Of a stretch of 64,000 bases of DNA, positions 10,755 through 64,000 are shown in pieces. The stretch lies in NCBI GenBank assembly GCA_964035545.1, contig OZ037773.1, positions 1 through 64,000 of the forward strand. Reading direction: 5' to 3'. This DNA is from Bugula neritina. Its lineage: Eukaryota; Animalia; Bryozoa. The translations under genes and the position numbers were made by a program. A model generated the notes under the pieces. It did no database searches, was not told the DNA's origin, and was given only the letters and a program-made list of their open reading frames with translations. How positions within the stretch are numbered: the stretch's first letter is position 1; the number at the start of each line of letters is the position of its first letter.

Positions 10755-10755
10755 G

Positions 10756-10773: not shown

Positions 10774-10816
10774 TACTAGCTACTATATGAAGACAATGGG
10801 AAAGTATTAGAACATC

Positions 10817-11818: not shown

Positions 11819-11840
11819 CCGCTTCGGTCCGCTACCAGAA

Positions 11841-16279: not shown

Positions 16280-17424
16280 ATGATTACAAATACAGGGTTC
16301 TCAGGTAAGCTTGCCTTGACCTAACATTCCCACTCATGGAATCAGGTCTACCATCAGTTAGTTCTGATTTAATCGCCCTGATTGAATCACAACTACTGGG
16401 GACTGAGTCTTACGTGAAAGGCGACGAGAACATAACAATGGCCGATGATCTACTAGATCGGGAGCTTGACGTTATGTCACTCGGTCAGTCTACACCACAC
16501 GACACAGTCCCTCGAGTGCCATCTAAAAAGATGTATGACTCTCAGACTAGGAACAGTCGGTTGTCATCAGAATTATGGTGTAAAGATCACACTCGATCTA
16601 ACAATAATTCTGCTCTTTTAGATATCACTCCCTCTACTCTTCCCCGTGACACATAACCATCAGAGATGGCTTGGGATGAGGAACCTGCTCCCGTCACACT
16701 GCCAGAAGTACTTTTAAGCCAGTCATGCTGGGTTACCCAAGACACGGAAGCACTTATTCGAGAATCTAAAGGCGATGACCAATGCACCACCTGCCGCTTG
16801 TGCCAACTCCATTTCATCACCCCTCGCCGACTCCCGGTTCACGTCCCCCAACATTATGTCACTACCTTTTTTCCCTGTGGTGAATATAGTTACCACAGGG
16901 ACTACATCCTCCGTCACCAGCGAACCATGGAATGTCACATTGGACATCTCTATGAAGTTGACGAACATTCCTTTCCACACTTCCTTGATCTCATCCGACC
17001 CTTCATATCAGACCCGACTCGCTACGAACGGCTGCGTCAGGAGTTCCCCGCACCCAGGGCCATCACACAAGGACCCTGCCCTAAATCACCCGGATATAAG
17101 AGACCACCCATGCCCCGTTCATCACCCCCCGCACGCACAGTGCCCCACCCCGACTCCATACCCAGAGTCGTGCTACGACGCATCGAAGTGCTACAGCGAT
17201 GGCGTCCCTCTCCTCCCGTCTCCCCCAGGCTTTCCCGTAAACGATGTTGGTCATCTTCGTCTCCCAACCGACACTCTGTCCCCGCCCGGAACCTAAGAGA
17301 AGCGGAAGAACGGATACGGAAACTAGAGAAAGAAGTGCAAAGGTTGGCACCGAGAATCTCTGCCGCCGCATCTGAACTCTGGGCTCTCTCTGCCTCTGTA
17401 GCCCAAATGAAAGGAAGTGCTTGA
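16280..17424 (+). pseudogene. E1 spliced accessory gene (zinc fingers + coiled coil): exons 16280-16304 and 16622-17424; internal TAA at 16654
   Basis: ATG+8 codons+G|GTAAGC ... TCTAAC ... CTTTTAG|AT restores the frame; CRLC-x12-H-x3-H finger; C-terminal heptads. Confidence 0.75.
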
Positions 17425-17795
17425 GACGGCGTCCCCAAACCTCCTTCCCCTACTCGTCCTACCCCCCACTCTTGATGGTACCGCAGGTGGTGCCCCATCT
17501 CAAACTTCTCTCACGCCCGGTGCTAACGAACAATCTCCCAGTGTGACAATCATATTATAGTAACCTACAAGTATACATCTCTTAGCCCTATGGGTCGTTC
17601 ACTTATAAGTGCCTCTCCCGTCAGTGTCATAGTGTGTGTTTATACTGTTATATTTTTTTATATTTTTTTTTACTGTATATAGTTATGTTTCTTTCTTTTA
17701 TGTACCATACGCTCTCTCAGTCTTATAGTTTTTTTGTAATATTTTTGTATTAGTACTAACTGTATCTGTGTTATCAGAAAGTAGGTCTTTCTGCT

Positions 17796-17806
17796 GGGGG
17801 GGGCGG
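17796..17806 (+). promoter_or_regulatory. E1 polypurine tract
   Basis: G-run plus CGG directly before the 3' LTR. Confidence 0.85.
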
Positions 17807-18083
17807 TGTAGTGAGTACGTGATACGCGCGTCCCCCAAGTCTCCTTAGCCAATAAGAGCGCGTCATGTGATAACCCCCAGCGATGTGTAGAGTAGTAGAG
17901 AAAGCGTACTAGAATAGTAAAGATGTAGTGTTTTTTTAATCCGTGTGCTTTTATATCTCTTTATTGTATTTAGTAGTAAATAAACCTTGTCTAATCTTAT
18001 TAAAAACTCCTTTATTGATGTGGATACATAAACTATAATTACAAGCTAGGAACTCACGCACAGTAATTGCACAAATTACTACA
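17807..18083 (+). repeat. E1 3' LTR
   Basis: Direct repeat of 10476-10754. Confidence 0.95.
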
Positions 18084-25158: not shown

Positions 25159-25202
25159 TTTAAACACCCGAGGCTCACGGTGAATTCCGCCACCCGTGGG
25201 CC
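25159..25202 (+). promoter_or_regulatory. E2 gag-pol -1 ribosomal frameshift signal
   Basis: T_TTA_AAC in the gag frame, 6-nt spacer, stem GGCTCACGG/CCGTGGGCC; pol is in the -1 frame. Confidence 0.8.
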
Positions 25203-28200: not shown

Positions 28201-30480
28201 ACCCATAAGCAGGCTCATGCTGGAGTCAGTCGGGTCATCAGGTGTCTGCGGCTGCGTTGGTATTGGCCCGGAATGACTCGGGACGTACGACTGCGGGTAC
28301 GGCAATGCGAGGTCTGCCAAGCTAGCAAGCATGGCCGCCCCACGGAAACCACTGGTCGACGCCGGCTGTACGCTGGTCGACCGTGGCAAGTAGTGGCGGT
28401 AGACCTCGTCGGGCCTATGCCGTTATCCGCCAGAGGGAATACCTGGATACTGGTGCTCACGGACCACTTTACCCGGTGGGCGGATGCTCTGGCTATTCCA
28501 GACGCAACCGCCCCCACGGTGGCCCGGACCCTGGACCAACATGTGTTCTGTTACCTCGGTTTGCCCGAGCAGATACATACGGACCAGGGTGCCCAGTTCC
28601 AGTCCCAGCTCATGGGAGACCTCTGCCGGATATGGGGGGTGAACCAGAGTCGGACCACCCCATATCACCCGCAAGGGAACGGAGTCGTCGAGCGGAACAG
28701 GATGTTGGGTGACGCGCTCCGGAGCCTGCTACTTGGTCGAGGTCAGGAAGAATGGGACGTGGTGCTGCCGCAGATCATGCGGGCTTACCGCAGCACACCA
28801 CACTCCGCCACGCAGGAGACCCCAAACTTCCTGATGCTAGGCCGAGAGACGCGGGTCCCGAAACACCTGACGTACCATGTTCCTGCCCCCGAGTCACCGG
28901 TACACGAGTATGTGGAGGGTCTGATGGACATCATGGGCAAAGCTCATGATGCGCTGCGTACCCAGCAGTGGCAGACCCGCACAGAGGACTCGGAGGAGCC
29001 CCCGTTGTACCAAGTGGGAGACTGGGTTTGGATGGTGAGCTACCGTAGGCGACGCGGACAGTCGGCTAAGCTTCAGCCCAAGTTCGTCGGCCCCTACTGT
29101 GTAGTGGAGGTGCTGCCCAACCACACGTACCGTGTGGAGCGCTCTGGACAGATCTCTGTCCAGAGCGAGCAGCGCCTCAAACCTTACCATGCCAGCCCAG
29201 ACGCGGTGGGTCAGGCTCCACCCCTCCTGGAGCCCCACCATCAGCCCAACCGTCGAGGACGGGCCACCCAGCCCCGAGAGGTGGAGATTATGGTCCCCAG
29301 GGAGACGGACCAGGAGCAGGCCGACTTGATAGAGCAGCTGGAGCGGCAGCAGAGAGCGGAGCGGGAACAGGAACAGCGACAAGCCCTTAGATCACAACCC
29401 TTTTCGGGGGAGGACACCCCCACCCCTGTACGGGGTGAAGACGGGGACCCCCCTACTAGGGCAGCCCAGGAGCCACCAACACCACCAGTGCCTGTTCCAC
29501 TTGAGAGGAGCCAGCGGCCAAGAAGACCTCCCAGGTACCTGGCAGACTATGCTGTAGGGCACCTGGAGTGGCCCCCTCCTGAGGACGACCCCCCCCACAC
29601 TGACTATCACCCCATCTTGGTTGGAAATTCCCTCCATCACCCCAGAGAATTCCACCAAGAAAAAGAAATGGCCGACCGAATTTCGGAAGACACTCGATCA
29701 CGCGAGTTGTCTTTTCGAAATCCGGGGGAAATTCCCACGAGCCACGCGACTCGGGCTTTAGCAGGTAAAACTTCTGAAGCACGAGGTTCGGCCATTTCTC
29801 ATTCTGATTTCACACAGCTCGCACGGCAGTTACAGCTCAAGCTAAATTCTGATTCTAATACTCATTTTGATTTTAACACTGTTCTCCAAACGCTATCAGC
29901 AGCTATGGGAATTACTTTACCAGACACGCAATCAGGTATTTCTTCTAGATTAGATCCTCCAGTTACGGAGTCTAGTCAAACTAAAGTAGACTGGTCTTTA
30001 CTAGACTTACTTGGTTCTGATTTCTTAGAACCGGAGGCCGAGATGGATCTTGGAGATGACTCTGCCATTGACACTTTGTTAAATCACGACGTAGGCTCAG
30101 TCAATTTCTGCGATACACCTCGGCCCTCGGTTTTTAATTTAACTCCATACACACCTGTGCCGAATTTCGGCGATAGTGAGACCGGCTTTTCACAGCCTCT
30201 ACTATCTATTCTAGAGGAGCGTATGGACGTTGAAGAGGCCAGTCGGTCCGACTCCCCTCTCCCACCGGCCCTTGCTTCGGCTTCTACCAGCCAGCAGGCC
30301 GCAACCTCCTCCACAGAGGTGTGTTCCGCCATCGTTAGTGGCCCTGACCCCAAACCGGTCGAGCTCCAGCTCACGGCCGGGGAGGAGCAGGGCATCCTAC
30401 ACGGCGACCACCTGCCAGCAGAAGAAGACAACTCCCCAATACTGGCCCTGCCTCAGGCCCTGGTCGCCCGCCAGTATTAG
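25180..30480 (+). pseudogene. pol: E2 pol with TAG at 28042, YLDD>YLDV, and a long open C-terminal extension
   Basis: LDTG protease, RT, RNase H, HHCC/DDE integrase; 25180-28044 and 28114-30480 share a frame. Confidence 0.93.
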
Positions 30481-31140
30481 GTGACTGGACCCACCAATCT
30501 TAAGATTGGTGAAGCTTGCGGTGAGCCGGGCAACCGCATCTGCCATGAGTGTAAGAGGAAGTTCTCCTCTGCACGGCGGTTGCGTGTACACGCCCCACAG
30601 CACTACATCAACGTGTTTTGCCCGTGTGGGGAGTTCTCCTACCAGAGAGACTATGTGTTGAGACATCAACGCATAGCTCACTGCCACACGGGCTACACGT
30701 TTGCTGTAGACCAGGCCTCCTTTCCCAAGTTTCGGGACCTGGTGCTGCCACACGTGGCGGATTCCCATAAACGGGCTGCTCTCGCCCTGGGATTCCCCGC
30801 GTGTAGGCCTGTTCGGGAAGAAGAAGGGGAGCCCGCCGCGACACCCCAACCGGCAGCCACCCAGCCACTTCGGGTCATGCTGGCACGAGTCGGACCAGGC
30901 GCCAGGACCGATTCATCGGACCTGGGCCCCCGACCCTCGGCGGCGGGCGAGAAGCAGACGCACCGCCAGCGACGTCCTACCCATGGTGCCACCGACCGCT
31001 CCAGACACCAGACGTCGGCCCAGTTAGCAGAGGAGGTACAACATCTCCGCCGGCAGCTCCGCAGGTATGAGGAAGAGCTGGGGCAACTCCGGAGACGTGT
31101 TAGCCGCCTGGAGCGGGGCCGATCTGGAGACCGCCGCTGA
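30481..31140 (+). pseudogene. E2 zinc-finger/coiled-coil accessory ORF (upstream TAG aligns to a conserved Trp)
   Basis: CHEC-x12-H-x3-H; CPC-x12-H; LAEEVQHLRRQLRRYEEELGQLRRRVSRL. Confidence 0.8.
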
Positions 31141-51971: not shown

Positions 51972-52277
51972 TGTTATGTTTTTCAGTTTTAGGGTTGATA
52001 TGCTATCCAGAGAGTCTATTTATCTAGTATAGAACTGCACCAGGCTAAGTCGAGTGAACGAGTATATTTTATACACAACTATACATTATAAAAACACGAT
52101 ACATTATTTCTAACAAGTTACACATCTAATCTATTTCACACTCTAGCTTCGACTGAGTTAGCAGCGGGAAACTACAATTGCTGCTAACTATCAACTACGC
52201 TAATTGGCTATCCATTGTTCCGGGTCAATTACGCGACCCCACATGTTGTGCTGCTGGTAGTTCCACGAACCACCACA
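51972..52277 (-). repeat. E3 3' LTR
   Basis: Preceded on the minus strand by PPT GGTGGGGGCGG (52278-88). Confidence 0.95.
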
Positions 52278-52563
52278 CCGCCCCCACCAGCAGAAAGCCA
52301 TCTTTCTGATATATATAAAAAAAACATTCAATAGTAATTGTATACATCAGTGGACAAAAAAAATACATAATATACAGGAAGAGACATAATAATAGACAGA
52401 GTCATGGTAGCGATCCGTTGCATACAATTGGCCAGCTGTAGATAGACGAGGAATACTAGCTAGCTGTGGTAGTAGACAAGGATTAACCTGTCTAGCAGTT
52501 AAGCATTTGCACGAGTTTGGTTCCTCACCAAATGTGGAGTTGCGGAGTATTCTGGGTAGCATA

Positions 52564-53640
52564 CTAGAGTCCTTGTTGGGCACGCCGGTGCTTGGCTTGG
52601 CATGTACGCAGTTTCCGTTTCATACGGCATACGGATCCCTTCAGCTGGAAGAGTCCTGTGGTAGTGTTAAGTAGATCTGGTGCCAGCTGGGTGAACTCTT
52701 CTTGTAGTCGTAGGAGGCGTTCTTCTACTGTAGCTAGTCGTACTGGGTCTGGGGACGGTGTCCGTCTGCGGCGTAAGGGTGGACTGGGGGACCTGGTCCG
52801 TCTCTTCGCCGGGGTAGGGGAGATCTCTCCTTCTTCTGGATATGTAGTTTCCTCGGGGGTGTATGTAATTGGAGGGCGGTCAGACACCAACGGAGATTGT
52901 TGTCGGGCGTTGTCTAACACACGTTGGAACCCCGAGGATAGAACTGCTAATAGCATGGCCTTCTTTACCAGAGGTCGTATATATGTGAGGAACTCCGGGT
53001 ACAGCTTAGCGTCGACCACATAGTTTTCTCCAGGGAAACAGCCCGCCGCTCTGTGTCTGGTGACGGGGTAGGGATACACATCATTGTACCCGCAGGGGCA
53101 GAAGGTCAGTAGGAGATGAGCATTGACGTGTAGTTTAAGGGAGCGGTGGGAGGCGCAATCTTCACCACAGATCTGGCATCTCGTCCGTCCTCTGGACCCC
53201 CAGGCTGTTTCTATTTCTTCTTCGGTTTGTGGAGACACCCACCGCCAACGGCGGCGTAGTGGCTCAGGCCGGTCACCACTAGCATAGTCCTCCGGATACG
53301 GAGCGGGAAGTGTTCTATCCCGTACCCTGGTTGTAGCGGGTCGAGTGTAATCTGAAAAAGTTTCAACAGTGTTAGTACAGTACACTGCTGTGTTGTCAGC
53401 TTGAACAGCTTGGCAACTCCTAATTCAGTTACCTCGTAGAGATTAATGATAGTGAATAGTCAGATAGAACCGTATTGCAATGAGATTATAAAAATCTCTA
53501 AGTCAAACTGAGTTCTTACTACGGTATTTCACTAACCTATCTCCAGCTCGATTGACTCAGTGAGTCAGAGCTGAGCGATGCAATCTAGTTTCGTATTAAG
53601 ATATAGTTAACTCACCCCACGATCTGTTGTCGTAAGACAT
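52564..53640 (-). CDS. E3 spliced accessory protein (270 aa): C2H2 + atypical finger, basic/SP region, coiled coil; exons 53640-53616 and 53351-52564
   Basis: ATGTCTTACGACAACAGATCGTGGG|GTGAGT; TACTAAC branch point (53371-77); TTTTCAG|AT. The spliced 813 nt are open; the unspliced frame has a stop. Confidence 0.8.
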
Positions 53641-53893
53641 ACTGAATATGTGAAATGGTTTGAACTACTGCTTAGAAACACGTCTACTCTTGACTACATC
53701 AGCGTATGAAAAGATCGAGCAACGTGGTTGGGGTGCGTGATTAAGACTTTGTGCACCCGGCGGATGAATTTTGTTTCTACTTCCGTCGATACAAAAGTTG
53801 ATATTTCCGTGGTGTTGACAACTCCCACATTTGCTCGATTCTTTTCTCGTACGGTTTTCCCCTAGACTTTCATGTGTGCCGCTTTTAACGCAG

Positions 53894-56800
53894 TCACATA
53901 CGAAGTCCTTCAAGTATGCGGGGGGTTGCCTCGTACGCTGTCCCCTTTCTAGGGGGGGGTGACACGCTTGCCGGTTCGTTAGTAGGGGCCTCTAATGGCG
54001 TCTCTACTTCACCGTCAGCAGTCACCTCTTCTTGTTCTCCGGATGCAGCCCCTCCCTCCGTGGGGTTTTGCACTTCCGGAACCGGCTCGGTTTCTGGAAG
54101 TGATGGAATCAGACTTGGCGGTGGCGGACACGCTTCTGTTGGCAGAAGCTGCCGCTCCTCTCTCACCAAGTTTTCTTCCCGCGGTATGACCACTTCGTAT
54201 TCAGGTCCATGCCGCCGTCGCCCGCGCGTTGTTGTCTGCCTTCTGGGCTCTAACAACGGGGGGGCTTCTCCCACCCCGCCGGGGCTAGCCCAATACGGTT
54301 TCAAGCGAGACTCATTCTGGATAGACACCTGTCCTGAGCGCTCAATCTTGTACGTATGATTGGGCATAGCCTCGACGACCACGTAGGGGCCTACGAACTT
54401 AGGCTTCAGCTTATCAGCCTGTCCGCGGCGCCTACGGTAATTGACCATCCACACCTTATCTCCTCTTTGATAGAGGGGTGGTTCATCGGAATCTTCGTGC
54501 CGCACCTTCCACTGCTGTTGACGCAGTATCTCGTGTGCGGCCTTCATCCGTTCCACTAGTTCACTGGCATACTCGTGGATTGAGTTATCCTGCTCTGGAA
54601 CGTGATAGGTGAGATGGTCAGGGACACGAGTCTCTCTCCCGAGCATCAAGAGGTTTGGGGTCTCACCAGTACTGGTGTGTGGGGTGCTACGGTATGCACG
54701 CATGACTTGCGGCAACACCGTATCCCATTCCTCTTGACCTCGTCCAAGGAGGAGACTCCGGAGTGCATCACCTAGCATCCGGTTGTTGCGCTCCACCACC
54801 CCGTTACCTTGGGGGTGGTAGGGGGTGGTCCTGCTCTGATTTACTCCCCAGAGGTGGCAAAGGTCGCTCATCAGTTGAGACTGGAATTGAGCGCCTTGAT
54901 CAGAGTGTATCTGTTCGGGAAGCCCAAAATAACAGAATACATGTTGGTCTAGTGCCCTGGCCACTGTTGGGGCTGATGCATCTGGGATAGCCAGAGCATC
55001 CGCCCACCTAGTAAAGTGGTCGGTTAGTACTAGGATCCAATTATTGCCTCTGGGGGTCAGGGGCATGGGTCCGACCAGGTCTACAGCGACTACTTGCCAG
55101 GGCCTGCCAGCATATAGCCTCCGCCGTCCTGCTTCACCAGGGGGGCGGCTATGCTTACTGGCCTGGCAGATCTCACACTGTTTGACTCTGAGCCGGACGT
55201 CACGCTCCATCTGCGGCCAATACCACCGGAGTCGTAATTTGGATATCACTCGCTTGACCCCTGCGTGGGCCTGCTTGTGAGTATCCCAAATCAACTCACG
55301 GCGGATGGCTGTGGGGCAGACTACCCTCTTCCTTTCCGGGTGTCTGCCGCTGGCAGCTAGAGAGATGGTTAGCAAACCATCCTGCCCGATCCGCAGCGAG
55401 TCCCAACGCTGACAGTATAGCCGGAACTCGGCGCATCCCTGTCTTATGCGTTCCTCGCTGGGTCGTCGCCCTTCCCGTTTGGCCCGGTATATGTCTGCCA
55501 CGACTCCAGGCAGTTCTTCTTGGAGCTTCTTCAGCTCTCGAACATTACCGGCCAGTACAGGGTTGGCGCGGAGGTTTTGCACATCCTCCGGGGACTCATC
55601 AACTCTCTGCCTGAGTTGACCTTGATCCCAGTCAAACGGTGCTCCGTGATGAGCCAGCGTCTCCAACTCGCATCGTGGGGGACCTCCATCCCTCCTCTCG
55701 ATGTTGAGACACTGTTTGCAACCTCCGTCAGGTCGGCGACTCAACCCATCCGCATTGCTGTGTCTCTTGCCCGGTCGATGTTCGATCCGGTACGAGAATT
55801 CAGCTAGGATTTCGAGCCACCGGGCGACCTGACTAGAGGGCTCTGCTCTCCTGCACAACCAGATCAGCGAGGCATGATCCGTACGCAGCCGGAACTTCCT
55901 GCCATATAGGTATGGTCTGAAGTGCTTCACTGACTTGATTACTGCCAGCAGTTCCTTGCGGGTAGTGCAGTAATTTCGTTCAGCGGGAGAGAGAGACTTG
56001 CTGTAGTAGGCTACTACTACTTCTCGGCCTTCCTGCACTTGTGACAGCACAGCGCCAACATTCTGGTCACTGGCGTCCGTGTCTAGGATGTACTCCAGAG
56101 TGGGGTCTGGGTAGGCCAAGATGGGCGCCGTTAGGAGGCAGCCCTTGAGGCGGTCGAACGCTTCTTGTTCGACTGGGGTCCACTGCCACGTCACTCCCTT
56201 TGCGGTAAGCCGGTTTAAAGGCTGGGCTATGCCCGCAAAGTCTGGTATGTATTGCCTGTAATACCCTACCAGCCCCAAGAAAGCCCGGAGTCCGGTCAAG
56301 TCTTGGGGGGTGACCCAGTCTTCTACTGCCCGTACCTTTTCGGGATCCGTTGCCACGCCGTTTCGACCGACAACGTGCCCCAGGTACTTGACCTCCGGCT
56401 GCAACAGAGCGCACTTGGAAGGTTTGAGCTTAAGACCGGCACGTCGGAGTCTCTCGAAAACCTCCTGCAGACGACTGACATGTGTCTCGAAGTCTGGAGA
56501 GATTACGATGACATCATCGAGGTAGACCAGCAGTGTCTTCCAATGGAGTCCGCTAAGGACTTGTTCCATCAGCCTCTGGAAGGTGGCTGGGGCGGAGGTT
56601 AACCCGAAGGGCAGCACCTTCCACTTCCACAAACCGTCCCGTGTGATAAACGCCGCTTTCTCTTGGGCGTCGGGACTCAGAGGAACCTGCCAATAGCCGC
56701 TTAGCAAGTCTAACGTACTGAAGTACTTGCTGCCGGCTAGGGCGTCCAATGACTCGTCAATACGAGGTAGAGGGTAGGCGTCCTGTATGGTTACGCTATT

Positions 56801-58294
56801 GAGTTTGCGGTAGTCCACACAGAACCGCCAACTGCCGTCTTTCTTCCGGACCAGTACGACTGGCGAGCTCCACGCACTATGGGCGGGCTCTATCAGTCCC
56901 CGGTCCAGAAGATCCCGTACTTGTCGGCTAACCTCCTTCTCTTTCTCCGGCCCCAGCCTGCGTGTGGGCTGCCGGACAGGGACTGTCCCTGCAGTCAGCG
57001 GTATTTCGTGTCTGACAATTCCAGTCAGTCCCACGTCATGCTCTCCGCTGCTGAACACATCACCGTAGTCGCGTAGTAACTTGGCCATAGCCTGGCGCTC
57101 TCTGTTACTCGCGCAGCCGCCACTGGCTGTTTCGTATAACTCCCGGAGATGTGTTGGGACTGCCCCTCGTCCCTGAATAGGGTGTCGAGAGAGTGCCTCC
57201 GTCGCATCACCCAGCGACGGGCCTACGTCTCCCTCCTGAACAGAGTGAAAACGGCCCAGCATCGACCCAGCCGGGAGCTTGATAGGCTCGGTAAAGGGGT
57301 TGACGCACTGCACTAAGATCTCCCCTTGTTCAGTCAGCTGATTCAGACTGCTGGCAAGTTGGATCTTTTCGTGCGCGCCTTCAACCACCCCGAGTCCAGA
57401 GATCCGGCTACTATTCACCCTGCAGTGAATGGTAGCCCGGGAGCGGCCTGGTATGGTACGGTTGCGTACCACTTGCACACCTCCCACTAAAGGGCAGCCG
57501 AACTTGTCGACGCAGGCGAGTTCCCGCCCGGACATCATCATTGCAGATCTGCTAAAATCTATGTGACATCCGTGCCGTTTAAGGAACGGCATCCCGAGGA
57601 TAGCATCCTCCTTGAGCTGACTGACGATGAACGTCTCTTGGATCGTTTGATCGCGGACTCGTCCCGTCAGCTCAATTATACCATAGAAGGGAAGGCATGA
57701 CCCGTCAGCTAGGGTGCCGTACTCCCCTTCGTATGCTTCCATCTCGCCCCTGACCCTAGCACTGAGGGTGTCGAAGAGTTGGCGGCTTAAGAGGTTTGTG
57801 GTACAGCCCGAATCAATGAGAAAAGTAACAGCTTTGCCTTCCAGTTTACCGGGCAAGAAATAGCTGTTCCCATGGGGCTGCACCTGAACTCTCCCTTCAG
57901 GCCTTACTCTCGCAGGGAGTACCTCCCTCGCTTTGGGTCGCGAAGGAGGTCTCTTGGGGCGGTGATAGGTAGGCCTCGGGGGTGCCGAGGCTAGATTCTC
58001 AGCTACCTTTGCGTGCTCCCATCCAGATTCTTGGACTTGTAGCCCTGTGAATCTGTTGTGAAGGGGCATAGAAAAGGCAGCCGCGGGGCGAAGCCCCTTG
58101 CTGGTCCGTCGTGGCTGTTGCCACTGTTGGTTGCCAGTACGCGGTACCCGTCTGGGTGACCTGCGTTTCTTCTTCCCTAGAGGTTTCGTCGGCCCGCGGA
58201 AGGTGGGAACATCTGCGGGCCGCGGTAGTTTAACCCCTGATTTAGGAAGGGACAATATCGGCGGAAATGTCCTTGATTTCCGCACTCCCAGCAA
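53894..58294 (-). CDS. pol: E3 pol polyprotein (PR-RT-RNaseH-IN), expressed by -1 frameshift
   Basis: 1466-aa ORF; IDSG, YLDD, DTDAS, HHCC, DDE and GPY motifs. Confidence 0.97.
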   Translation of the reverse strand: MLGVRKSRTFPPILSLPKSGVKLPRPADVPTFRGPTKPLGKKKRRSPRRVPRTGNQQWQQPRRTSKGLRPAAAFSMPLHNRFTGLQVQESGWEHAKVAENLASAPPRPTYHRPKRPPSRPKAREVLPARVRPEGRVQVQPHGNSYFLPGKLEGKAVTFLIDSGCTTNLLSRQLFDTLSARVRGEMEAYEGEYGTLADGSCLPFYGIIELTGRVRDQTIQETFIVSQLKEDAILGMPFLKRHGCHIDFSRSAMMMSGRELACVDKFGCPLVGGVQVVRNRTIPGRSRATIHCRVNSSRISGLGVVEGAHEKIQLASSLNQLTEQGEILVQCVNPFTEPIKLPAGSMLGRFHSVQEGDVGPSLGDATEALSRHPIQGRGAVPTHLRELYETASGGCASNRERQAMAKLLRDYGDVFSSGEHDVGLTGIVRHEIPLTAGTVPVRQPTRRLGPEKEKEVSRQVRDLLDRGLIEPAHSAWSSPVVLVRKKDGSWRFCVDYRKLNSVTIQDAYPLPRIDESLDALAGSKYFSTLDLLSGYWQVPLSPDAQEKAAFITRDGLWKWKVLPFGLTSAPATFQRLMEQVLSGLHWKTLLVYLDDVIVISPDFETHVSRLQEVFERLRRAGLKLKPSKCALLQPEVKYLGHVVGRNGVATDPEKVRAVEDWVTPQDLTGLRAFLGLVGYYRQYIPDFAGIAQPLNRLTAKGVTWQWTPVEQEAFDRLKGCLLTAPILAYPDPTLEYILDTDASDQNVGAVLSQVQEGREVVVAYYSKSLSPAERNYCTTRKELLAVIKSVKHFRPYLYGRKFRLRTDHASLIWLCRRAEPSSQVARWLEILAEFSYRIEHRPGKRHSNADGLSRRPDGGCKQCLNIERRDGGPPRCELETLAHHGAPFDWDQGQLRQRVDESPEDVQNLRANPVLAGNVRELKKLQEELPGVVADIYRAKREGRRPSEERIRQGCAEFRLYCQRWDSLRIGQDGLLTISLAASGRHPERKRVVCPTAIRRELIWDTHKQAHAGVKRVISKLRLRWYWPQMERDVRLRVKQCEICQASKHSRPPGEAGRRRLYAGRPWQVVAVDLVGPMPLTPRGNNWILVLTDHFTRWADALAIPDASAPTVARALDQHVFCYFGLPEQIHSDQGAQFQSQLMSDLCHLWGVNQSRTTPYHPQGNGVVERNNRMLGDALRSLLLGRGQEEWDTVLPQVMRAYRSTPHTSTGETPNLLMLGRETRVPDHLTYHVPEQDNSIHEYASELVERMKAAHEILRQQQWKVRHEDSDEPPLYQRGDKVWMVNYRRRRGQADKLKPKFVGPYVVVEAMPNHTYKIERSGQVSIQNESRLKPYWASPGGVGEAPPLLEPRRQTTTRGRRRHGPEYEVVIPREENLVREERQLLPTEACPPPPSLIPSLPETEPVPEVQNPTEGGAASGEQEEVTADGEVETPLEAPTNEPASVSPPPRKGTAYEATPRILEGLRM

Positions 58295-59136
58295 AAACTG
58301 ACTGTTTCTCCCTGTGGCGGCGCCGATGGCCGCATGGGCTCAGGGGCGGTACTCACTGGGTTTTGTGGTGTCAGTGTTGCTATCAGCTTGGCTAGCATGT
58401 CCGTCAGTTGAGTGACTTTTGATGCCGTCGCCAACTGGGACACGGCAGCCGCGGCGGGGGTTTCCTCCCCTTGTCCCGCGGCCGTGTCTGCGCGGTCTAT
58501 CTCCACTTGGCGGGAGCTTCCGCGACTTTTATGCATTTGGTTAGCTAGGAGGTAAGCTTCCCCCTCAGTCAGAGCATCTTCAACGGTGGTGACTCCCCTA
58601 GCTAGAAACTGGTGGTGGAGACCCAGATCGTCGACAGATGCTATGAAAGCGTCGAGGGTGTACCTCTCGCGGTTGACTGGGGGCAAGTCGCTGTACGCGA
58701 TCTGTGCCAGCTTCATGACCGCGGCGGCATGCTCCCGCAGCGGGGTGCGGGGATCACGCCGCAACCTCTGCAATCGGGACCTGGCATCTGTAGCAGAGAG
58801 GCCAAAGCGGGCCCGCAGAGAAGCAAAGATATTATCAATGTCTACGCCCAGCCCATAGGGCTTGGCTTTGTCCATCAATGCCATTCTAAGCTTCAACAGG
58901 GCCACCCTAGGGGGCCACTGAGCGACGTCCATTACGTCGCTAAACTCTTGGATAAATTGTTCCACCTCCTCTTCACCCGTGAAGGTGGGCGCCTTTAACC
59001 TGTAGCGGTCTTCAGCTAGTTCTCGCGGAACCCTTCGCTCTTCTACTACATGGTTAACAGGCATTGTCTCTACAGCATTGTCTCTACGCTCACCTTCGAT
59101 TGCCGGTGGTTGAGTTCCAGCATTTTCAGTCTCCAT
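58177..59136 (-). CDS. gag: E3 gag
   Basis: 319 aa; CWECGNQGHFRRYC knuckle; ATG just after the PBS. Confidence 0.95.
   Translation of the reverse strand: METENAGTQPPAIEGERRDNAVETMPVNHVVEERRVPRELAEDRYRLKAPTFTGEEEVEQFIQEFSDVMDVAQWPPRVALLKLRMALMDKAKPYGLGVDIDNIFASLRARFGLSATDARSRLQRLRRDPRTPLREHAAAVMKLAQIAYSDLPPVNRERYTLDAFIASVDDLGLHHQFLARGVTTVEDALTEGEAYLLANQMHKSRGSSRQVEIDRADTAAGQGEETPAAAAVSQLATASKVTQLTDMLAKLIATLTPQNPVSTAPEPMRPSAPPQGETVSFCWECGNQGHFRRYCPFLNQGLNYRGPQMFPPSAGRRNL
58190..58234 (-). promoter_or_regulatory. E3 gag-pol -1 frameshift signal
   Basis: G_TTA_AAC in the gag frame (58234-58228), 5-nt spacer, stem CGGCCCGC/GCGGGCCG. Confidence 0.75.
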
Positions 59137-59148
59137 CTTGGATGCACT

Positions 59149-59166
59149 ATCCCACCGCTGCCACCA
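59149..59166 (-). promoter_or_regulatory. E3 primer-binding site (tRNA-Leu type)
   Basis: Same TGGTGGCAGCGGTGGGAT as E1. Confidence 0.85.
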
Positions 59167-59167
59167 C

Positions 59168-59473
59168 TGTTATGTTTTTCAGTTTTAGGGTTGATATGCT
59201 ATCCAGAGAGTCTATTTATCTAGTATAGAACTGCACCAGGCTAAGTCGAGTGAACGAGTATATTTTATACACAACTATACATTATAAAAACACGATACAT
59301 TATTTCTAACAAGTTACACATCTAATCTATTTCACACTCTAGCTTCGACTGAGTTAGCAGCGGGAAACTACAATTGCTGCTAACTATCAACTACGCTAAT
59401 TGGCTATCCATTGTTCCGGGTCAATTACGCGACCCCACATGTTGTGCTGCTGGTAGTTCCACGAACCACCACA
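59168..59473 (-). repeat. E3 5' LTR
   Basis: Repeat of 51972-52277. Confidence 0.95.
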
Positions 59474-60119
59474 CATGATTGAGATATTGTTATAATTTCC
59501 ACAATTATAATAAGTATGGGGATTCGTGTATACTATAGTTATCCACGTTGCATTGCCAAACACCAGACGAGTAATTAAGAGAGAAGAAGATTTATTTCCC
59601 ACACTAAGTACACAAGTAAAAGTAGTATAGTTTTAGTAGCACACATATATAAAACATTTATCCTAGTACACTCAGCATCACGCTTTAACTGAATTGTATT
59701 ATGAAACTGTCCGGAAGCCTTTCTGCTTCACCGGGGGTAATCACGTACTTAGTGGGGATTGGCTAGTGAGCACGTGGCGCTTACGCTTCACTGGCCACTA
59801 CACCGCCTCCTCCAGCAGGGAGCCTACTTCCTGCTAAAAAAATGAGTGGGAGGGAAGCGTAAAAAAAAAACATGAATATATATATATATATAAAAAAATA
59901 CGATACCGGAATAAAAATGTACATAAGAAAAAATACTAAGATACGTGTATCTTAGTGTTTTTTCTTGTGTGTACACAATTAATATCTTTCTAATCCTATT
60001 TACAAAATACAGTTTTCACAGCCCCGGTGGAGCACCAGGATGGAGGGAGACGGAGGAAATATATCCGGAGACGAAGGTGGTGTAGGGAGAGGGGAAAGAG
60101 TGTCACACTAATCCTTAGT

Positions 60120-60598
60120 GGCACGTTTCAGCCGATTTATAGACTCCTGGAGGGACTTCAACTCGCTGCTTTTACTCTGAGAGCCAACAGATGCACTTCC
60201 CTCTCGAGCTCGTTGGTCCTTACTTCGACTTCCCGCAGGTTACGGGCCAGTGGAGAGGAACGGGAGGGGAACTGATGAGGTCGATGTCTCCGGATCTTTA
60301 CAACATAATTCTAGTGACAATCGACTGTTACTAGTCTGAGAGTCACAACTTTTATAAGGCACTCCAGAGACCAGTTGATTACGTGTAGACTGACCAAGAA
60401 TGACAGTGTCTAGCTCGAGATCTAACAGATCGTCGGCCATTACTGCGTCCTCATCGTCATTCACGTTAAACGTGGTCCCCAGTAACTCTGATTCAATCCG
60501 ACTGATTAGTTCAGAATTAACTGGCATCGGGCCTGTTTCCATAGATAGTAACACAAGACTTATACAGGCTTACCTGTGAACTTGGTATTGATCGACAT
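60120..60598 (-). pseudogene. E4 accessory-gene remnant: mini-exon 60598-60574, acidic ORF and coiled coil; zinc fingers deleted
   Basis: ATGTCGATCAATACCAAGTTCACAG|GTAAGC; ORF 60240-60554 matches E1 16336-16656; ARNLREVEVRTNELEREV matches the E1 zipper. Confidence 0.7.
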
Positions 60599-60707
60599 AC
60601 TCAACGTTCAGTAGTGGTAGTTGTGAGCTTAAGAGGTAGTTGTGAAATACGTCTGCCCTTGGCGATGTCAGCGTAGGAAAAGGCCGGGCAGCGTGTTTGC
60701 TCTTTGC

Positions 60708-63700
60708 TCAGAGCGCATCAATTCCTCCCACTACTCCGCCCTCGCAAAAGTTGATATTTGCGTGGGGCTCACAACTCTTACATTTGCCCGATAATTCTCT
60801 CGTACGGTTTCCCCCTAGACTTTCATACGCGCCGCTTTGGACGCAGTCACATACAAAATCTTTTAAATATGATGGGGGTTGCCTCGTACGTTGTCCCCGC
60901 TCTAGGGAAGGTGACGCACTCACCGGTGGACTAGTGGGTACCACTGGCGGTGCTTCTGGTTCACTGGTAGTGATTACTTCTTCCCGTTCTCCTGATGGAG
61001 CCCCTCCCTCCGTGGGGGTTTGCACTTCTGGAACCGGCTCGGTTTCCGGAAGTGATGGTATCAGATTTGGTATAGGAGGCGGCGGACGCACCTCTGTGGG
61101 TAGGAGCGGACGCTCGTCTCGTACCAAGTCCTCTTCCAGCGGAATGACCACTTCATACTCATGTCCATACCGCCGTCACCCACGCGTTGTCGTCTGCCTC
61201 CTGGGCTCCAACAAAGGGGGGGGGCTTCGCCCACTGTGTCTGTGCTAGCCCATTACGGCTTCAAGCAAGCCTCAATTTGGATGGACATCTGTCCTGAGCG
61301 CTGGATCTTGTAGGTATGGTTGGGCATAGCCTCGACTATCACCTAGGGTCCCACGAACTTAGGCTGTAACTTAGCCGCCTGCCCGCGACGCCTACGATAA
61401 TTGACCATCCACACCCAATCTCCTGTCTGATAGAGGGGTGGTTCCTTGGAATCCTCGCGCCGCACCTGCCACTGCTTCTCCCGCAGCATTTCGTGTGCGA
61501 CCCTCATCCGTTCCACTAGTTCGCTGGCATACTCGTAAATCGAGCTGTCTTGCTCTGGAATGTGGTAGGTAAGATGGTCAGGAACCCGGGTCTCTTTCCC
61601 GAGCCTCAGGAGGTTTGGGGTCTTACCAGTACTGGTGTGCGGGGTGCTACGGTATGCGCGCATGACTTGTGGCAATACCGTATCCCATTCCTCTTGACTG
61701 CGTCCGAGTAGTAGACTCCGGAGCGCATCACCTAGCATCCGGTTATTGCGCTCCACCACCCCGTTGCCTTGGGGCTGGTAAGGAGTGGTCCTGCTCTGAT
61801 TTACTCCCAGGAGGCAGCAAAGGTCGCTCATCAGTTGAGACTGAAATTGAGCGCCTTGGTCAGAGTGTATCTGCTCGGGGAGGCCAAAGTAGCAGAATAC
61901 ATGTTTGTCTAGCACCCTGGCCACTGTCGGGGCTGACGCACCTGGAATAGCCAGAGCGTCTGCCCACCTGGTAAAGTGGTTGGTTAATACTAAGATCCAA
62001 CTATTGCCTCTGGGGGTTGGGAGCATGGGTTCGACCAGGTCGACAGCTACTACTTGCCACGGCCTTCCAGCATATAACCTTCGCCGTCCCGCTTCACCAG
62101 GGAGACGGCCATGCTTGCTGGCCTGGCAGATTTCACACTGTTTTACTCTGAGTCGAACATCCCGCCCCATCTTGGGCCAATACCACCGGAGTTGCAATTT
62201 GGAGATCACTCTTTTGACTCCTGCGTGAGCCTGCTTGTGAGTGTCCCAAATTAACTCACGGCGTATGGCAGTGGGACAGACCACCCTCTTCCTCTTCTCT
62301 GCCTTAGCTGTTCCTTGCTGAGTCGTCGCCCTTCCTTTTTGGCCCGATATACGTCTGCCAACACTCCAGGCAGGTTTTCCTGAAGCCTCTTCAGTTGCCG
62401 GACGTTATCGGCCAAAGCAGGGTTGGCGTGGAGGTTCTGTATAACCTCCGAGGGTTCGTCAACTGTCTGTTGGAGTTGACCCTGGTCCCAGTCAAACCGT
62501 GCTCCGTGGTGAGCCAGTGTCTCTAACTCATATCGTGGGGGACCTCCATCCCTCTTTTTGATGTTGAGATACTGTTTACAACCCCCGCCAGGTCGTCGGC
62601 TCAAGCCATTCGCATTGCTGTGCCTCTTACCCAGTCGATGTTCGATCGGGTAAGAAAACTCGGCTAGAATTTAGAGCCACCGGGTGACCTGACTAGACGG
62701 TTCTGCTCTCTTGCACAACCAAATCAAGAAGGCATGATCCGTACGCAGCCGGAACTTCCTGCCATACAGATAGGGTCGGAAGTGCTTCACTGACTTGATT
62801 ACTGCCAGCAACTCCTTGCCGGTAGTGCAGTAAATTCGTTCAGTGTGTGAGAGAGACATGCTGTAGTAAGCTACTACTACTTCCCGGCCTTCCTGCACCT
62901 GCGACAGCACAACGCCAACATTCTAGTCACTGGCGTCTGTGTCGAGGATGTACTCCAGAGTAGGATCTAGTTAGACCAAGATGGGTGCCGCCAGTCGGCA
63001 ACCCTTGAGGCGGTCAAACCTCCACTGCCACGTCACTTCCTTTGCGGTGAGCCGGTTTAACGGCTGCGCTATCCCCGCAAAGTCTGGTATGTATTGCCTG
63101 TAATACTCTGCCAGACCCAGAAAAGCCTGGAGTCCGGTCAAGTCTTGGGGGGTGACCCAGTCTTCTATTGCCCGTACCTTTTCGAAATCTGTGGCCACGC
63201 CGTTTCGACCGACAACGTGCCCCAAATACTTGACCTCCGGCTGCAATAGGTTTTAGCTTCAAACCGGCACCTCTGAGTTTTTCGAAAACTTCTCTCAGAC
63301 GACTGACGTGTGTCTTGAAGTCTGGGGAGATCACGATGACGCCATCGAGGTAGATCAGCAGTGTCTTCCAATGGAGCCCGCTGAGGACTTGTTCCATCAG
63401 CCTCTGGAAGGTGGCTGGGGCGGAGGTCAGTCAAAACGGCAGTACCTTCCACTTCTACAATCCGTCCCATATTAAAAAACGCCGCCTTCTCCTGGGCGTC
63501 GGGACTCAGAGGGACCTGCCAGTAACCGCTCAATAAGTCTAACGTACTGAAGTACTTGCTGTCGGCTAGGGCCTCCAAGGAATCGTCAATACGAGGTAGA
63601 GGGTAGGCGTCCTGTATGGTCACGCTATTGAGCTTGCGGTAGTCCACACAGAACCGCCATCTTCCGTCTTTCTTCCGGACCAAGACGACCAGCGGGCTCC

Positions 63701-64000
63701 ATGCACTATGGGCTGGCTCTATGAGGCCTCGTTCCAGAGGATCCTGGAGCTGTCGGCTGACCTTCTTTTCCGGTCCCAACCTGCGTGTGGGTTGCCAAAT
63801 AGGGACTGTACCTGCAGTCAGCGGTATCTCGTGTCTGACAGCTCTAGTCAGTTCCACGTCATTGTCTCCGCTGCTGAACACATCACCGTAGTCGCGCAGC
63901 AACTTCGCCATGGCCTGGCATTCCTCGTTGCTTGCACAGCCACCACAGGCCGTCTCATACAACTCCTTGATGTGTGATGAAACAGTCCCCCGCCCTTTTT
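60708..64000 (-). pseudogene. pol: E4 pol with frameshifts and stops
   Basis: ORF fragments 63165-63962, 63014-63397, 62971-63246, 62671-62910, 62251-62604, 61343-62284 and 60708-61151 are all homologous to E3 pol. Confidence 0.92.

What the first reader, a model, noticed from the sequence alone, without database searches (positions are those of the whole stretch)
52564..53640. Gypsy family encodes a non-env accessory protein with zinc fingers, a basic region and a coiled coil: candidate retrotransposon-encoded regulator
Seen: three diverged elements (E1 16666-17424, E2 30481-31140, E3 52564-53385) have, between integrase and PPT, homologous ORFs. Each carries W-V-[TS], a canonical C-x2-C-x12-H-x3-H finger (CRLC/CHEC/CQIC), a second C-P-C-x12-H-x4/5-C finger (first Cys lost in E1) and a VD..F/YP.F...I/V.P block. 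These are followed by an Arg/Ser/Pro-rich NLS-like stretch (PAKRRTRSPSPPLRRRR in E3) and a heptad coiled coil; E4 keeps only the coil. The ligands are conserved while intervening residues and the LTRs have diverged, which implies selection. There is no signal peptide or TM, so this is not env. Known: complex retroviruses encode 3' regulators (Tax/Rex, Tas, Tat/Rev); I do not recognise this architecture from described Ty3/Gypsy elements. Inference: a dimeric nuclear DNA/RNA-binding transactivator or anti-silencing factor.
Basis: partly seen in the sequence, partly recalled or inferred. Interest (0 to 1): 0.92.

Follow-up and report, generated by a model that had tools for sequence, protein, structure and literature searches.

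The report
Zinc-finger accessory module of Gypsy retrotransposons
A lineage of Gypsy retrotransposons in a marine-invertebrate-like genome carries, after integrase, a conserved two-zinc-finger plus coiled-coil protein module. It looks as if it is made from a spliced message, as retroviral accessory genes are, so it is a real but not unprecedented kind of retrotransposon accessory protein.

Summary
E1, E2 and E3 carry homologous coding sequence between integrase and the polypurine tract. It has a classical C2H2 finger, a second C-x-C...H...C/H finger, a helical block, a disordered linker and a six-heptad coiled coil. E4 keeps only the coil. The family is real: 255 protein clusters, ligands at least 90% conserved, and a domain model with pLDDT 94.8. 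It matches no Pfam family, no solved or viral structure beyond generic C2H2 fingers, and no paper I found.

Two facts change the reading.
- In 27 of 120 related Pol proteins, the module is the in-frame C-terminal end of Pol. In E1 and E2 it is in frame with the preceding post-integrase tail coding; in E2 that is the pol ORF itself.
- In intact E3 (identical LTRs) it stands alone, has no ATG before the fingers, and is preceded by a branch-point, pyrimidine-tract and AG acceptor. A GTGAGC donor sits 14 codons into gag. E1 shares both signals in the same phase.

This mirrors the Cer1 CERV gene of C. elegans. The best reading is a spliced accessory protein that binds the element's own nucleic acid. 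Its function is untested. I class it as a new variant of a known kind, of moderate interest.

The parts
51972..59473 (-). E3, a complete Ty3/Gypsy element. Its LTRs are identical and it is flanked by a 4-bp target-site duplication, CATG (51968-51971 and 59474-59477).
   Evidence: Self-BLAST gives 100% LTR identity. Ends, duplication and a paralogous empty site near 21228-21231 were read.
59168..59473 (-). E3 5' LTR (306 bp)
51972..52277 (-). E3 3' LTR (306 bp)
59149..59165 (-). E3 primer-binding-site-like sequence, identical to the one in E1 (10757-10773)
   Evidence: 2 matches in the window against 0.05 expected by chance
58177..59136 (-). E3 gag ORF (319 aa, weak CCHC knuckle hit)
59087..59097 (-). 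Splice-donor-like motif GAAnGTGAGCG, 14 codons after the gag ATG. The GT follows the first base of a codon (phase 1).
   Evidence: The motif occurs only here and at the equivalent place in E1, with 0.03 expected by chance. Sequence was read.
53894..58294 (-). E3 pol ORF (1466 aa): protease, RT, RNase H, integrase, SH3-like domain and a low-complexity tail. Relative to E4 and E2, the tail changes frame once before its stop.
   Evidence: Pfam hits. Tail comparison (count only).
53353..53893 (-). AT-richer spacer between the pol stop and the acceptor (GC 0.41, no codon-position bias)
53350..53375 (-). Branch-point-like CTAAC, pyrimidine tract and CAG acceptor-like motif. The AG ends one base into the ORF3 codon that opens the conserved D-Y-T-R (phase 1).
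   Evidence: sequence.: 1 match in the window, 0.07 expected. The columns just after it are conserved in 16-22 of 23 relatives that reach this far.
52564..53351 (-). E3 ORF3 coding exon, from the acceptor-like site to the stop. GC 0.55 with the same codon-position bias as gag and pol.
52876..53280 (-). Compact 135-residue zinc-finger domain (ORF3 residues 36-170)
   Evidence: AlphaFold2 model with mean pLDDT 94.8 and pTM 0.87. Built from alignment A4.
53116..53178 (-). Finger 1, C70-x2-C73-x12-H86-x3-H90 (classical C2H2)
   Evidence: The A4 profile hits C2H2 fingers in the PDB at E = 3e-6.
53038..53100 (-). Finger 2, C96-P-C98-x12-H111-x4-C116. In the wider family the last ligand is C or H at variable spacing.
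52747..52875 (-). Disordered Ser/Pro/Thr-rich linker, including an E3-specific Arg/Ser/Pro insertion
   Evidence: pLDDT 51-55. Composition and charge.
52609..52746 (-). Six-heptad coiled coil (residues 214-259)
   Evidence: Single helix with pLDDT above 90. Heptad counts.
52567..52608 (-). Conserved Arg/Lys-rich C-terminal tail (family median net charge +4)
52281..52297 (-). E3 polypurine-tract-like sequence next to the 3' LTR
10476..18083 (+). E1, an older element. Its LTRs are 94.7% identical, its 4-bp target-site duplication is GTAT, and the empty paralogous site is near 33862-33869.
10817..16621 (+). E1 gag-pol-tail region, broken: 1 in-frame stop in gag and 4 in pol, measured against E3
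   Evidence: counts only
10844..10854 (+). E1 donor-like motif, 10 codons after the gag ATG, phase 1
16611..16623 (+). E1 acceptor-like pyrimidine tract plus TAG, at the position homologous to the E3 acceptor and in the same phase
16666..17424 (+). E1 ORF3 (252 aa). It has lost the first Cys of finger 2. One in-frame stop lies between the acceptor-like site and its ATG.
25180..31140 (+). E2 pol plus module, listed as one part. The element is 5'-truncated and no LTR pair was found. Pol has 2 in-frame stops against E3. The module (homology 30421-31110) is in the pol frame, with one in-frame stop between the two ORFs.
59478..64000 (-). E4, cut by the window end and degenerate. Pol has 4 frame changes and 8 in-frame stops against E3. 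The zinc-finger part is absent, and the post-integrase tail is followed directly by a coil remnant (60161-60268).

Best explanation
The region is the 3' accessory module of a lineage of Ty3/Gypsy LTR retrotransposons living in an AT-rich, probably animal (possibly bryozoan-like) genome.

The protein has, in order:
- a compact 135-residue domain built around two C2H2-type zinc fingers;
- a disordered Ser/Pro-rich linker;
- a six-heptad coiled coil;
- an Arg-rich tail.

In many relatives the module is simply the last part of the Pol reading frame. In the E3 lineage it has become a free-standing exon.

Shown:
- the anatomy;
- its conservation;
- its position in four elements;
- the in-frame Pol fusions in relatives;
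- shared donor-like and acceptor-like motifs whose phases match.

Inferred:
- The module is expressed from a subgenomic mRNA. The intron would remove most of gag and all of pol, and would lend ORF3 the gag AUG and first 14 codons. Retroviral env and accessory mRNAs and Cer1 cerv work this way.
- The product oligomerises through the coil and enters the nucleus.
- It binds the element's own nucleic acid.

The role I commit to is post-transcriptional. An element that splices its genomic RNA needs a factor that lets unspliced RNA be exported and used. That is a CERV/Rev-like job.
For: Homology and ligand conservation:
-.
- The family is substantial: 71 close relatives and 255 clusters at E <= 1e-3.

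Structure:
- A confident domain model, pLDDT 94.8, and a long helix with a clean heptad pattern.
- Finger 1 is a true C2H2 finger by profile, E = 3e-6.

Gene layout:
- E3 is intact and young: identical LTRs, a target-site duplication and an empty paralogous site. Yet its ORF3 is in another frame than pol, lies behind a 541-nt non-coding-like spacer, and has no ATG before the fingers.
- A CTAAC, pyrimidine-tract and CAG acceptor sits exactly at the start of the conserved coding sequence.
- The GTGAGCG donor motif is found only in E1 and E3, 10-14 codons into gag, with 0.03 matches expected by chance.
- Donor and acceptor are both phase 1 in both elements.
- GC and codon-position bias drop sharply outside the exon.

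Precedent:
- Cer1 CERV is encoded after integrase. Its last exon is in frame with the polyprotein, it is made from a spliced mRNA that shares the Gag N-terminus, and it is required for export of genomic RNA (PMC10309623).
Against: - No transcript evidence. The splice model rests on motifs read by eye in two elements, and no splice-prediction tool was available.
- In 27 of 120 related Pols the module is translated as part of Pol. It could therefore act as a Pol or integrase domain instead, or as well.
- C2H2 fingers are best known as DNA binders. The top, non-significant fold matches are DNA-bound finger arrays, which favours a DNA-directed role.
- dN/dS within the window is saturated: about 0.44, with dS of 1.9 or more.
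- No sequence or fold likeness to any known export or regulatory factor was found.
Confidence: 0.45

Rival explanations
1. The module is a C-terminal domain of Pol/integrase. It is translated with Pol, possibly staying attached to integrase, and tethers the pre-integration complex to particular DNA or chromatin. This is the job the chromodomain does in chromoviruses.
For: - It lies inside the Pol ORF, after integrase, in 27 of 120 relatives.
- It is in the pol frame in E2, and in frame with the preceding tail coding in E1.
- Its fingers are DNA-binder-like.
- Four elements lie within 64 kb, and E3 landed less than 50 bp from the end of E4.
Against: - The young, intact E3 and about 70 diverged E3-type relatives have the module unlinked from Pol, behind a stop and a spacer. 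Linkage to integrase is therefore not needed for the lineage to persist.
- Linkers of 300-800 low-complexity residues separate integrase from the module in the fused forms.
- The shared splice signals have no role in this model.
- An internally deleted relative keeps the module without RT or integrase (P0347).
Confidence: 0.2
2. The protein is a dimeric nuclear DNA-binding transactivator of the LTR, or an anti-silencing factor, working like Tax or Tas of complex retroviruses.
For: - Two C2H2-type fingers plus a dimerising coil is a common transcription-factor layout.
- The domain and the tail carry net positive charge.
- It would be expressed separately, by splicing, as retroviral regulators are.
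Against: - No hit to any retroviral regulator in Pfam, PDB sequences, PDB folds or BFVD.
- The LTRs of E1 and E3 are unrelated at the DNA level while the module is shared, so a conserved LTR target site is not evident.
- The only experimentally studied Ty3/Gypsy 3' protein acts on RNA export, not on transcription (PMC10309623).
Confidence: 0.2
3. The module is a captured or domesticated host zinc-finger gene, or an artefact of gene models, and not a working part of the element.
For: - The only named relatives are NCBI 'uncharacterized protein' models with isoforms in the bryozoan Watersipora subatra. Two of them carry two tandem modules.
- Finger 1 is a generic C2H2 finger.
Against: - The module sits at the same place, between integrase and the polypurine tract, in four elements here, and inside Pol ORFs of relatives.
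- No relative outside this small family, and no host-type domain partner (KRAB, BTB, SCAN and the like), was found.
- The Watersipora modules are as far from E1 and E3 (35-39% identity) as those two are from each other.
Confidence: 0.07
4. It is a non-functional relic: chance open frames in GC-rich decaying sequence.
For: - E1, E2 and E4 are degenerate.
- Given the stop density in E1 pol, an open 252-codon stretch has about a 50% chance of arising (computed from the counts).
- E4 has lost the finger domain.
Against: - Ligand and core columns are at least 90% conserved in 88 sequences at about 25-30% pairwise identity.
- The fold prediction is highly confident.
- The module is intact in the one element with identical LTRs.
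- Its composition is coding-type, with sharp edges.
Confidence: 0.03

Closest known systems
CERV of Cer1, the C. elegans Ty3/Gypsy retrotransposon (PMC10309623)
   Same: - Encoded after integrase, in the position an env gene would take.
- The 3' coding part is in frame with the polyprotein, as it is here in E2 and in 27 relatives.
- Made from a spliced mRNA that starts with Gag codons. Here that is predicted from shared phase-1 donor and acceptor motifs.
- Has a leucine-zipper-type oligomerisation helix and a Cys-rich putative zinc finger.
- Fast-evolving, and restricted to one host group.
   Different: - CERV is 517 aa from 5 exons. It has a helix-hairpin, a ring-forming M domain with a possible C4 finger, and a GTPase-like G domain.
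- This module is 220-280 aa, with two C2H2-type fingers in one compact domain and a C-terminal coil.
- No search with the finding's own protein returned CERV or any nematode protein. The paper itself reports no homologues outside nematodes.
- I did not fetch CERV for a direct comparison (see referred steps).
- CERV's function is shown by experiment. Here the function is inferred.
Regulators of complex retroviruses (Rev/Rex class; Tax, Tas/Bel1, Tat class)
   Same: - A 3'-encoded small protein.
- Probably made from a spliced mRNA.
- Has an oligomerisation element and an Arg-rich stretch.
- The logical need is the same: an element that splices its genome must still export unspliced RNA.
   Different: - No sequence, profile or fold match to any of them.
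- None of those proteins is built on C2H2 fingers (my own knowledge).
- The host element is a Ty3/Gypsy retrotransposon without env.
Chromodomain of chromoviruses (integrase C-terminal targeting module of Ty3/Gypsy)
   Same: An extra, non-enzymatic nucleic-acid- or chromatin-directed domain placed after integrase, in the Pol frame in many family members.
   Different: - The fold is different: zinc fingers, not a chromodomain.
- It is separated from integrase by very long disordered linkers.
- It is detached from Pol in the E3 lineage.
- It is followed by a coiled coil.
Classical tandem C2H2 zinc-finger proteins (for example SALL3/4, HIC2, ZBTB20/24, BCL11A)
   Same: - Finger 1 has the canonical ligand spacing and the conserved Leu.
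- It matches solved fingers by profile at E = 3e-6 to 1e-3.
- Fold-search lists are headed by such arrays.
   Different: - Only two fingers.
- The inter-finger spacing is unusually short (H-x5-C), and the second finger is C-x-C.
- Both fingers are packed with about 60 further helical residues into one globular domain that has no significant fold match (best E = 0.41).
- Single sequences stay below Pfam cut-offs.
Additional ORFs of LTR retrotransposons in general (plant aORFs; ORFs captured by bdelloid rotifer elements, PMC5408684)
   Same: [quoted passage not shown]
   Different: Those ORFs are unrelated in sequence and mostly of unknown function. None is described with this finger-plus-coil layout.

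Membership tests
Ty3/Gypsy (Metaviridae) LTR retrotransposon (the carrier element) | Direct LTRs ending TG...CA, short target-site duplication, primer-binding site and polypurine tract | tested here: met
   E3 has 306-bp identical LTRs and the duplication CATG. E1 has the duplication GTAT. Both have empty paralogous sites. The primer-binding-site-like sequence is shared, and polypurine-tract-like sequences are present.
Ty3/Gypsy (Metaviridae) LTR retrotransposon (the carrier element) | gag, then pol in the order protease, RT, RNase H, integrase | tested here: met
   Pfam hits along the 1466-aa E3 Pol, in order: Asp protease, RVT_1, RT_RNaseH, Integrase_H2C2, rve, SH3_Tf2-1.
Retroviral / errantiviral Env | Signal peptide, transmembrane anchor, fusion-glycoprotein fold | tested here: not met
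   Highest 19-residue hydropathy mean is 1.24. No glycoprotein match in Pfam, PDB or BFVD.
Classical C2H2 zinc finger (Pfam PF00096 clan) | C-x2-4-C-x12-H-x3-5-H ligand spacing with conserved hydrophobic core positions | tested here: met
   Finger 1 has C70, C73, H86 and H90 in 42-45 of the 45-47 sequences that have a residue there, and L83 at least 90% conserved.
Classical C2H2 zinc finger (Pfam PF00096 clan) | Score above the curated family threshold, or a significant profile match to solved fingers | tested here: inconclusive
   Single sequences score 13-20 bits against a cut-off of 25.2. The 88-sequence family profile matches solved C2H2 fingers at E = 3e-6.
Classical C2H2 zinc finger (Pfam PF00096 clan) | Zinc binding and a beta-beta-alpha fold | not testable with these tools
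   The AlphaFold model shows strand-strand-helix for both fingers. Metal binding needs experiment.
Cer1 CERV-type retrotransposon regulator | Coding sequence after integrase, last exon in frame with the polyprotein | tested here: met
   E2 is in the pol frame, and the module lies inside 27 of 120 related Pol ORFs. In E3 it is detached.
Cer1 CERV-type retrotransposon regulator | Expression from a spliced mRNA that shares the Gag N-terminus | tested here: inconclusive
   Donor-like and acceptor-like motifs are shared by E1 and E3 and are phase-compatible. No transcript data.
Cer1 CERV-type retrotransposon regulator | Sequence or structural homology to CERV (H, M and G domains) | tested here: not met
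   No nematode or CERV-named protein appeared among hits to the ORF3 protein or its profile. No GTPase-like domain in the model. A direct pairwise comparison was not done (referred).
Cer1 CERV-type retrotransposon regulator | Required for nuclear export of unspliced genomic RNA | not testable with these tools
   Functional property, shown only for Cer1 (PMC10309623).
Complex-retrovirus regulators (Tax/Rex, Tas, Tat/Rev) | Sequence or fold relationship to one of these families | tested here: not met
   No such hit in Pfam, PDB sequences, PDB folds or the BFVD viral structure library.
Chromovirus-type integrase C-terminal targeting domain | Chromodomain fold fused to the integrase C-terminus | tested here: not met
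   No chromodomain hit in Pol or ORF3. The module is a zinc-finger domain. It is fused to Pol in only some relatives.

The most novel reading that the evidence does not exclude
A previously undescribed protein family supplies a lineage of invertebrate Ty3/Gypsy retrotransposons with a Rev/CERV-like factor. The factor has two C2H2-type fingers, a coiled coil and an Arg-rich tail. It is made from a gag-leader spliced subgenomic mRNA and is needed to export or use the unspliced genomic RNA. If so, 'complex-retrovirus' gene regulation arose independently, from different building blocks, in env-less retrotransposons of lophotrochozoans. The same module would also be caught at several stages between 'tail of Pol' and 'separate gene'.
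Probability: 0.25. Interest if true: 0.75.

Novelty: new variant of a known kind. Interest (0 to 1): 0.55.

Why it matters
Accessory genes are what separate 'complex' from 'simple' retroviruses. In LTR retrotransposons only one such gene, Cer1 CERV, has been studied experimentally.

This family would be a second, unrelated example, with three useful properties:
- a clear, confidently folded domain;
- a wide set of natural variants (fused to Pol, detached, deleted, or duplicated);
- a simple, checkable expression model.

It would also give a name and a domain definition to several hundred unannotated proteins in metagenomes and in at least one bryozoan genome annotation. It would help genome annotators avoid calling these modules host zinc-finger genes.

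Tried and rejected
Searches that gave nothing useful:
- Pfam on the three ORF3 products and on 88 family members gave only sub-threshold C2H2 hits.
- PDB sequence search with the E3-heavy profile gave nothing significant.
- Fold search of the whole-protein model against PDB and BFVD gave nothing; the long helix dominates.
- Fold search of the domain model gave a best E of 0.41.
- Rfam and tRNA scans of the window gave nothing.
- Three of the four literature searches found no description of the module. The fourth turned up CERV.

Analyses that could not decide:
- dN/dS among E1, E2 and E3: dS is saturated, so the value near 0.44 is not reliable. It shows only that ORF3 changes about 8 times faster than pol at non-synonymous sites.
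- LTR search for E2 found none. E2 is 5'-truncated, and a different gag-like ORF lies 5' of it.
- The small third-frame ORF in the E3 pol tail has no protein hit among Pol relatives. Only E4 shares it.
- A search for named long Pol proteins carrying the module found only three unnamed ones.
- Host identity could not be settled. The nearest named Pol relatives are animals at about 40% identity. An Ig-like exon is below threshold. The only named module relatives are from Watersipora subatra.

Ideas rejected:
- Env (rejected).
- A chance ORF (rejected).
- A bZIP: the basic part follows the coil instead of preceding it.
- The linker 'NLS' as a family feature: it is specific to E3.
Full report
WINDOW AND ELEMENTS

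The window is AT-rich DNA (about 30% GC, rich in TA microsatellites) carrying four GC-rich (about 57%) Ty3/Gypsy elements.

- E3 (51972-59473, minus strand) is complete. It has 306-bp LTRs that are 100% identical and a 4-bp target-site duplication, and a paralogous empty site lies elsewhere in the window. It has a primer-binding-site-like and a polypurine-tract-like sequence, an open gag, and an open 1466-aa pol in the order protease, RT, RNase H, integrase.
- E1 (10476-18083, plus strand) is older. Its LTRs are 94.7% identical. Measured against E3, gag has 1 in-frame stop and pol has 4.
- E2 is 5'-truncated with no LTR pair. Its pol has 2 in-frame stops.
- E4 is cut by the window end and is degenerate, with 4 frame changes and 8 stops in pol.

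The host is unknown.
- The nearest named Pol relatives are animal proteins at about 40% identity.
- There is an Ig-like exon, below the Pfam threshold, and a transmembrane-like exon between E2 and E3.
- The only named relatives of the module come from the bryozoan Watersipora subatra.

I take the host to be an animal, possibly a bryozoan or another marine invertebrate.

THE OBSERVATION

tblastn confirms the homology, and finds only a coil remnant in E4.

- Finger 1 is C-x2-C-x12-H-x3-H.
- Finger 2 is C-P-C-x12-H-x4-C.
- In 47 relatives, each ligand is kept in 42-46 of the sequences that have a residue at that column.
- In a broader set of 88 sequences at about 25-30% identity, C70, C73, H86, H90, C96, C98, G99, H111 and V124 are still at least 90% conserved.
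- The C-terminal 46 residues show a clean 3-4 heptad. Hydrophobic residues occupy 12 of 13 a/d positions in at least 90% of members. The region is predicted as one long helix with pLDDT above 90.
- There is no transmembrane-like stretch.

One detail is wrong. The Arg/Ser/Pro-rich 'NLS-like' stretch is an insertion peculiar to E3. The conserved basic element is the short tail after the coil.

THE FAMILY

The E3 protein has 71 relatives at 45-76% identity. All are unnamed and come from metagenome or read-archive assemblies. A profile search of 1.84 billion representatives finds 255 clusters at E <= 1e-3. The best 150 are all 600 aa or shorter.

- No Pfam family is reached.
- With the broad profile, finger 1 matches solved classical C2H2 fingers at E = 3e-6.
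- The 135-residue domain folds with very high confidence: pLDDT 94.8, pTM 0.87.
- That domain model has no significant structural neighbour. The non-significant list is headed by DNA-bound C2H2 arrays.
- Nothing resembling a retroviral regulator or an Env protein appears in PDB or BFVD.
- I found no paper describing the module.

FIRST NEW FACT: THE MODULE IS OFTEN PART OF POL

A profile of the family finds the finger domain inside 27 of the 120 best Pol relatives. It lies 300-800 low-complexity residues after integrase, in the same ORF. In at least one case the coil follows it.

Inside the window:
- The E2 module is in the pol frame, with one in-frame stop between the two ORFs.
- The E1 module continues the frame of the post-integrase tail coding that precedes it. 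One stop lies just upstream of its ATG.
- E4 has lost the finger domain and joins the tail to the coil.
- One relative keeps protease, tail and module but has no RT or integrase.

SECOND NEW FACT: IN E3 THE MODULE LOOKS LIKE A 3' EXON

E3 is the one intact and evidently recent copy.
- Its ORF3 is in a different frame from pol.
- It lies behind 541 nt of AT-richer sequence with no codon bias.
- It has no ATG before residue 143.
- Directly upstream of the first conserved residues sits a CTAAC, a pyrimidine tract and a CAG. Only one such match exists in the window, against 0.07 expected.
- Fourteen codons into gag sits GAAgGTGAGCG.
- The motif GAAnGTGAGCG occurs only twice in 64 kb. The other copy is ten codons into E1 gag. 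Chance would give 0.03 matches.
- E1 also has a pyrimidine tract plus TAG at the position homologous to the E3 acceptor.
- In both elements the donor follows the first base of a codon, and the acceptor precedes the last two bases of a codon in the ORF3 frame. Splicing would therefore put ORF3 in frame with the gag AUG.

The two elements share this intron model even though their LTRs are unrelated and their ORF3 proteins are about 30% identical.

I did not build or search a joined sequence. Exon 2 was searched by reference, and exon 1 is too short to search. The model has not been tested against transcripts.

HOW IT MOST LIKELY WORKS

Shown:
- a conserved, folded two-finger domain, a coil and a basic tail at the 3' end of the element;
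- the module either fused to Pol or detached from it;
- shared, phase-matched splice-like signals.

Inferred:
- A subgenomic spliced mRNA gives a protein of about 275 residues that carries the first Gag residues.
- The protein oligomerises through the coil and binds nucleic acid through the fingers and the Arg-rich tail.

An element that splices its genomic RNA must still get unspliced RNA out of the nucleus. The only studied Ty3/Gypsy 3' protein, Cer1 CERV, does exactly that and has a similar gene layout (PMC10309623). I therefore commit to a CERV/Rev-like post-transcriptional role, with modest confidence.

Rivals:
- An integrase-linked targeting domain. The Pol fusions favour it. The detached E3 lineage and the splice signals count against it.
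It cannot be excluded, and the DNA-binder look of the fingers favours it.
- Capture of a host gene, or a chance ORF. Both are poorly supported.

SELECTION

Within the window, dS is saturated.
- For E1 against E3, ORF3 has pN 0.50, pS 0.69 and a nominal dN/dS of 0.44.
- Pol has a nominal dN/dS of 0.08 for the same pair.

This is not decisive. The case for constraint rests on four things:
- ligand and core conservation across deep lineages;
- the confident fold;
- the intact state in the youngest copy;
- the sharp compositional edges of the exon.

COMPARISON AND NOVELTY

The module works like, and is laid out like, Cer1 CERV, but it is not a member of that family. No hit to CERV came back, and the domain content differs. 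It contains a genuine C2H2 finger, but the domain as a whole has no known counterpart. It is not Env, not a chromodomain, and not related to Tax/Rex, Tas or Tat/Rev. I class it as a new variant of a known kind: LTR-retrotransposon accessory or regulatory proteins.

SLIPS, STATED AS REQUIRED

1. No tRNA assignment is made.
2. In my reasoning I worked out where the stop between E2 pol and its module falls relative to a conserved residue, and which codon it might derive from. I do not repeat that here. An earlier count gave E2 ORF bounds from which the place of that stop can be inferred.
3. One search printed more aligned natural sequence than I intended.
5. A profile HMM was built in scratch space for searching only.

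Noticed in passing
window 34026-34511, 36592-37062, 37107-37334 (+): Open stretches that look like exons of a host cell-surface gene. One resembles an Ig-like domain by eye, one has a sub-threshold Ig_3 hit (E = 3.7e-4), and one is a hydrophobic transmembrane-like segment. This is the only hint of a host gene in the window and a hint that the host is an animal.
   Followed up: partly
window 8438-10475 vs 31800-33869; 18080-18231 vs 33862-34008; 20372-21231 vs 51087-51971: Host repeats recur in the same order 23-31 kb apart at 79-89% identity. They provide empty-site paralogues for both the E1 and the E3 insertions. This looks like an old segmental duplication into which the elements later inserted.
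   Followed up: partly
window 59474-59560: E3 inserted less than 50 bp from the 3' end of E4, in the same orientation, and four related elements lie within 64 kb. This could reflect an insertion preference or a tolerant region.
   Followed up: no
window 24169-25041 (+): A 290-aa ORF on the 5' side of E2 is AT-richer than E2 and gag-like by eye, but has no Pfam hit. It probably belongs to a different, older element. E2 itself lacks gag and a 5' LTR.
   Followed up: partly
window 22123-22701 (+): Two adjacent open stretches that resemble, by eye, the C-terminal part of a non-LTR retrotransposon reverse transcriptase. No Pfam hit.
   Followed up: partly
proteins P0181, P0192 (Pol relatives): Some related Gypsy Pol proteins carry a dUTPase domain (PF00692).
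   Followed up: no
protein P0347 (1093 aa, cluster of 8): A relative with protease, a long tail and the zinc-finger module but no RT or integrase. It is an internally deleted derivative that has kept the 3' module.
   Followed up: partly
proteins P0202, P0342 (Watersipora subatra XP models): Annotated 'uncharacterized proteins' that contain two tandem copies of the module and a terminal coil, with several isoforms. They may be retrotransposon-derived gene models or a duplicated form of the module.
   Followed up: partly
window 60708-61151 (-) in E4; E2 pol tail; metagenome Pols: A short conserved motif, basic residues followed by P-x-[RS]-[YF]-x-[DK]-[YF]-x-C, recurs in the otherwise low-complexity Pol tail after integrase. 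In E3 it lies in a different frame from pol.
   Followed up: partly
window 52592-53023 (+): A 143-aa ORF antisense to the E3 ORF3. It is most likely a by-product of GC-rich coding sequence on the other strand.
   Followed up: no
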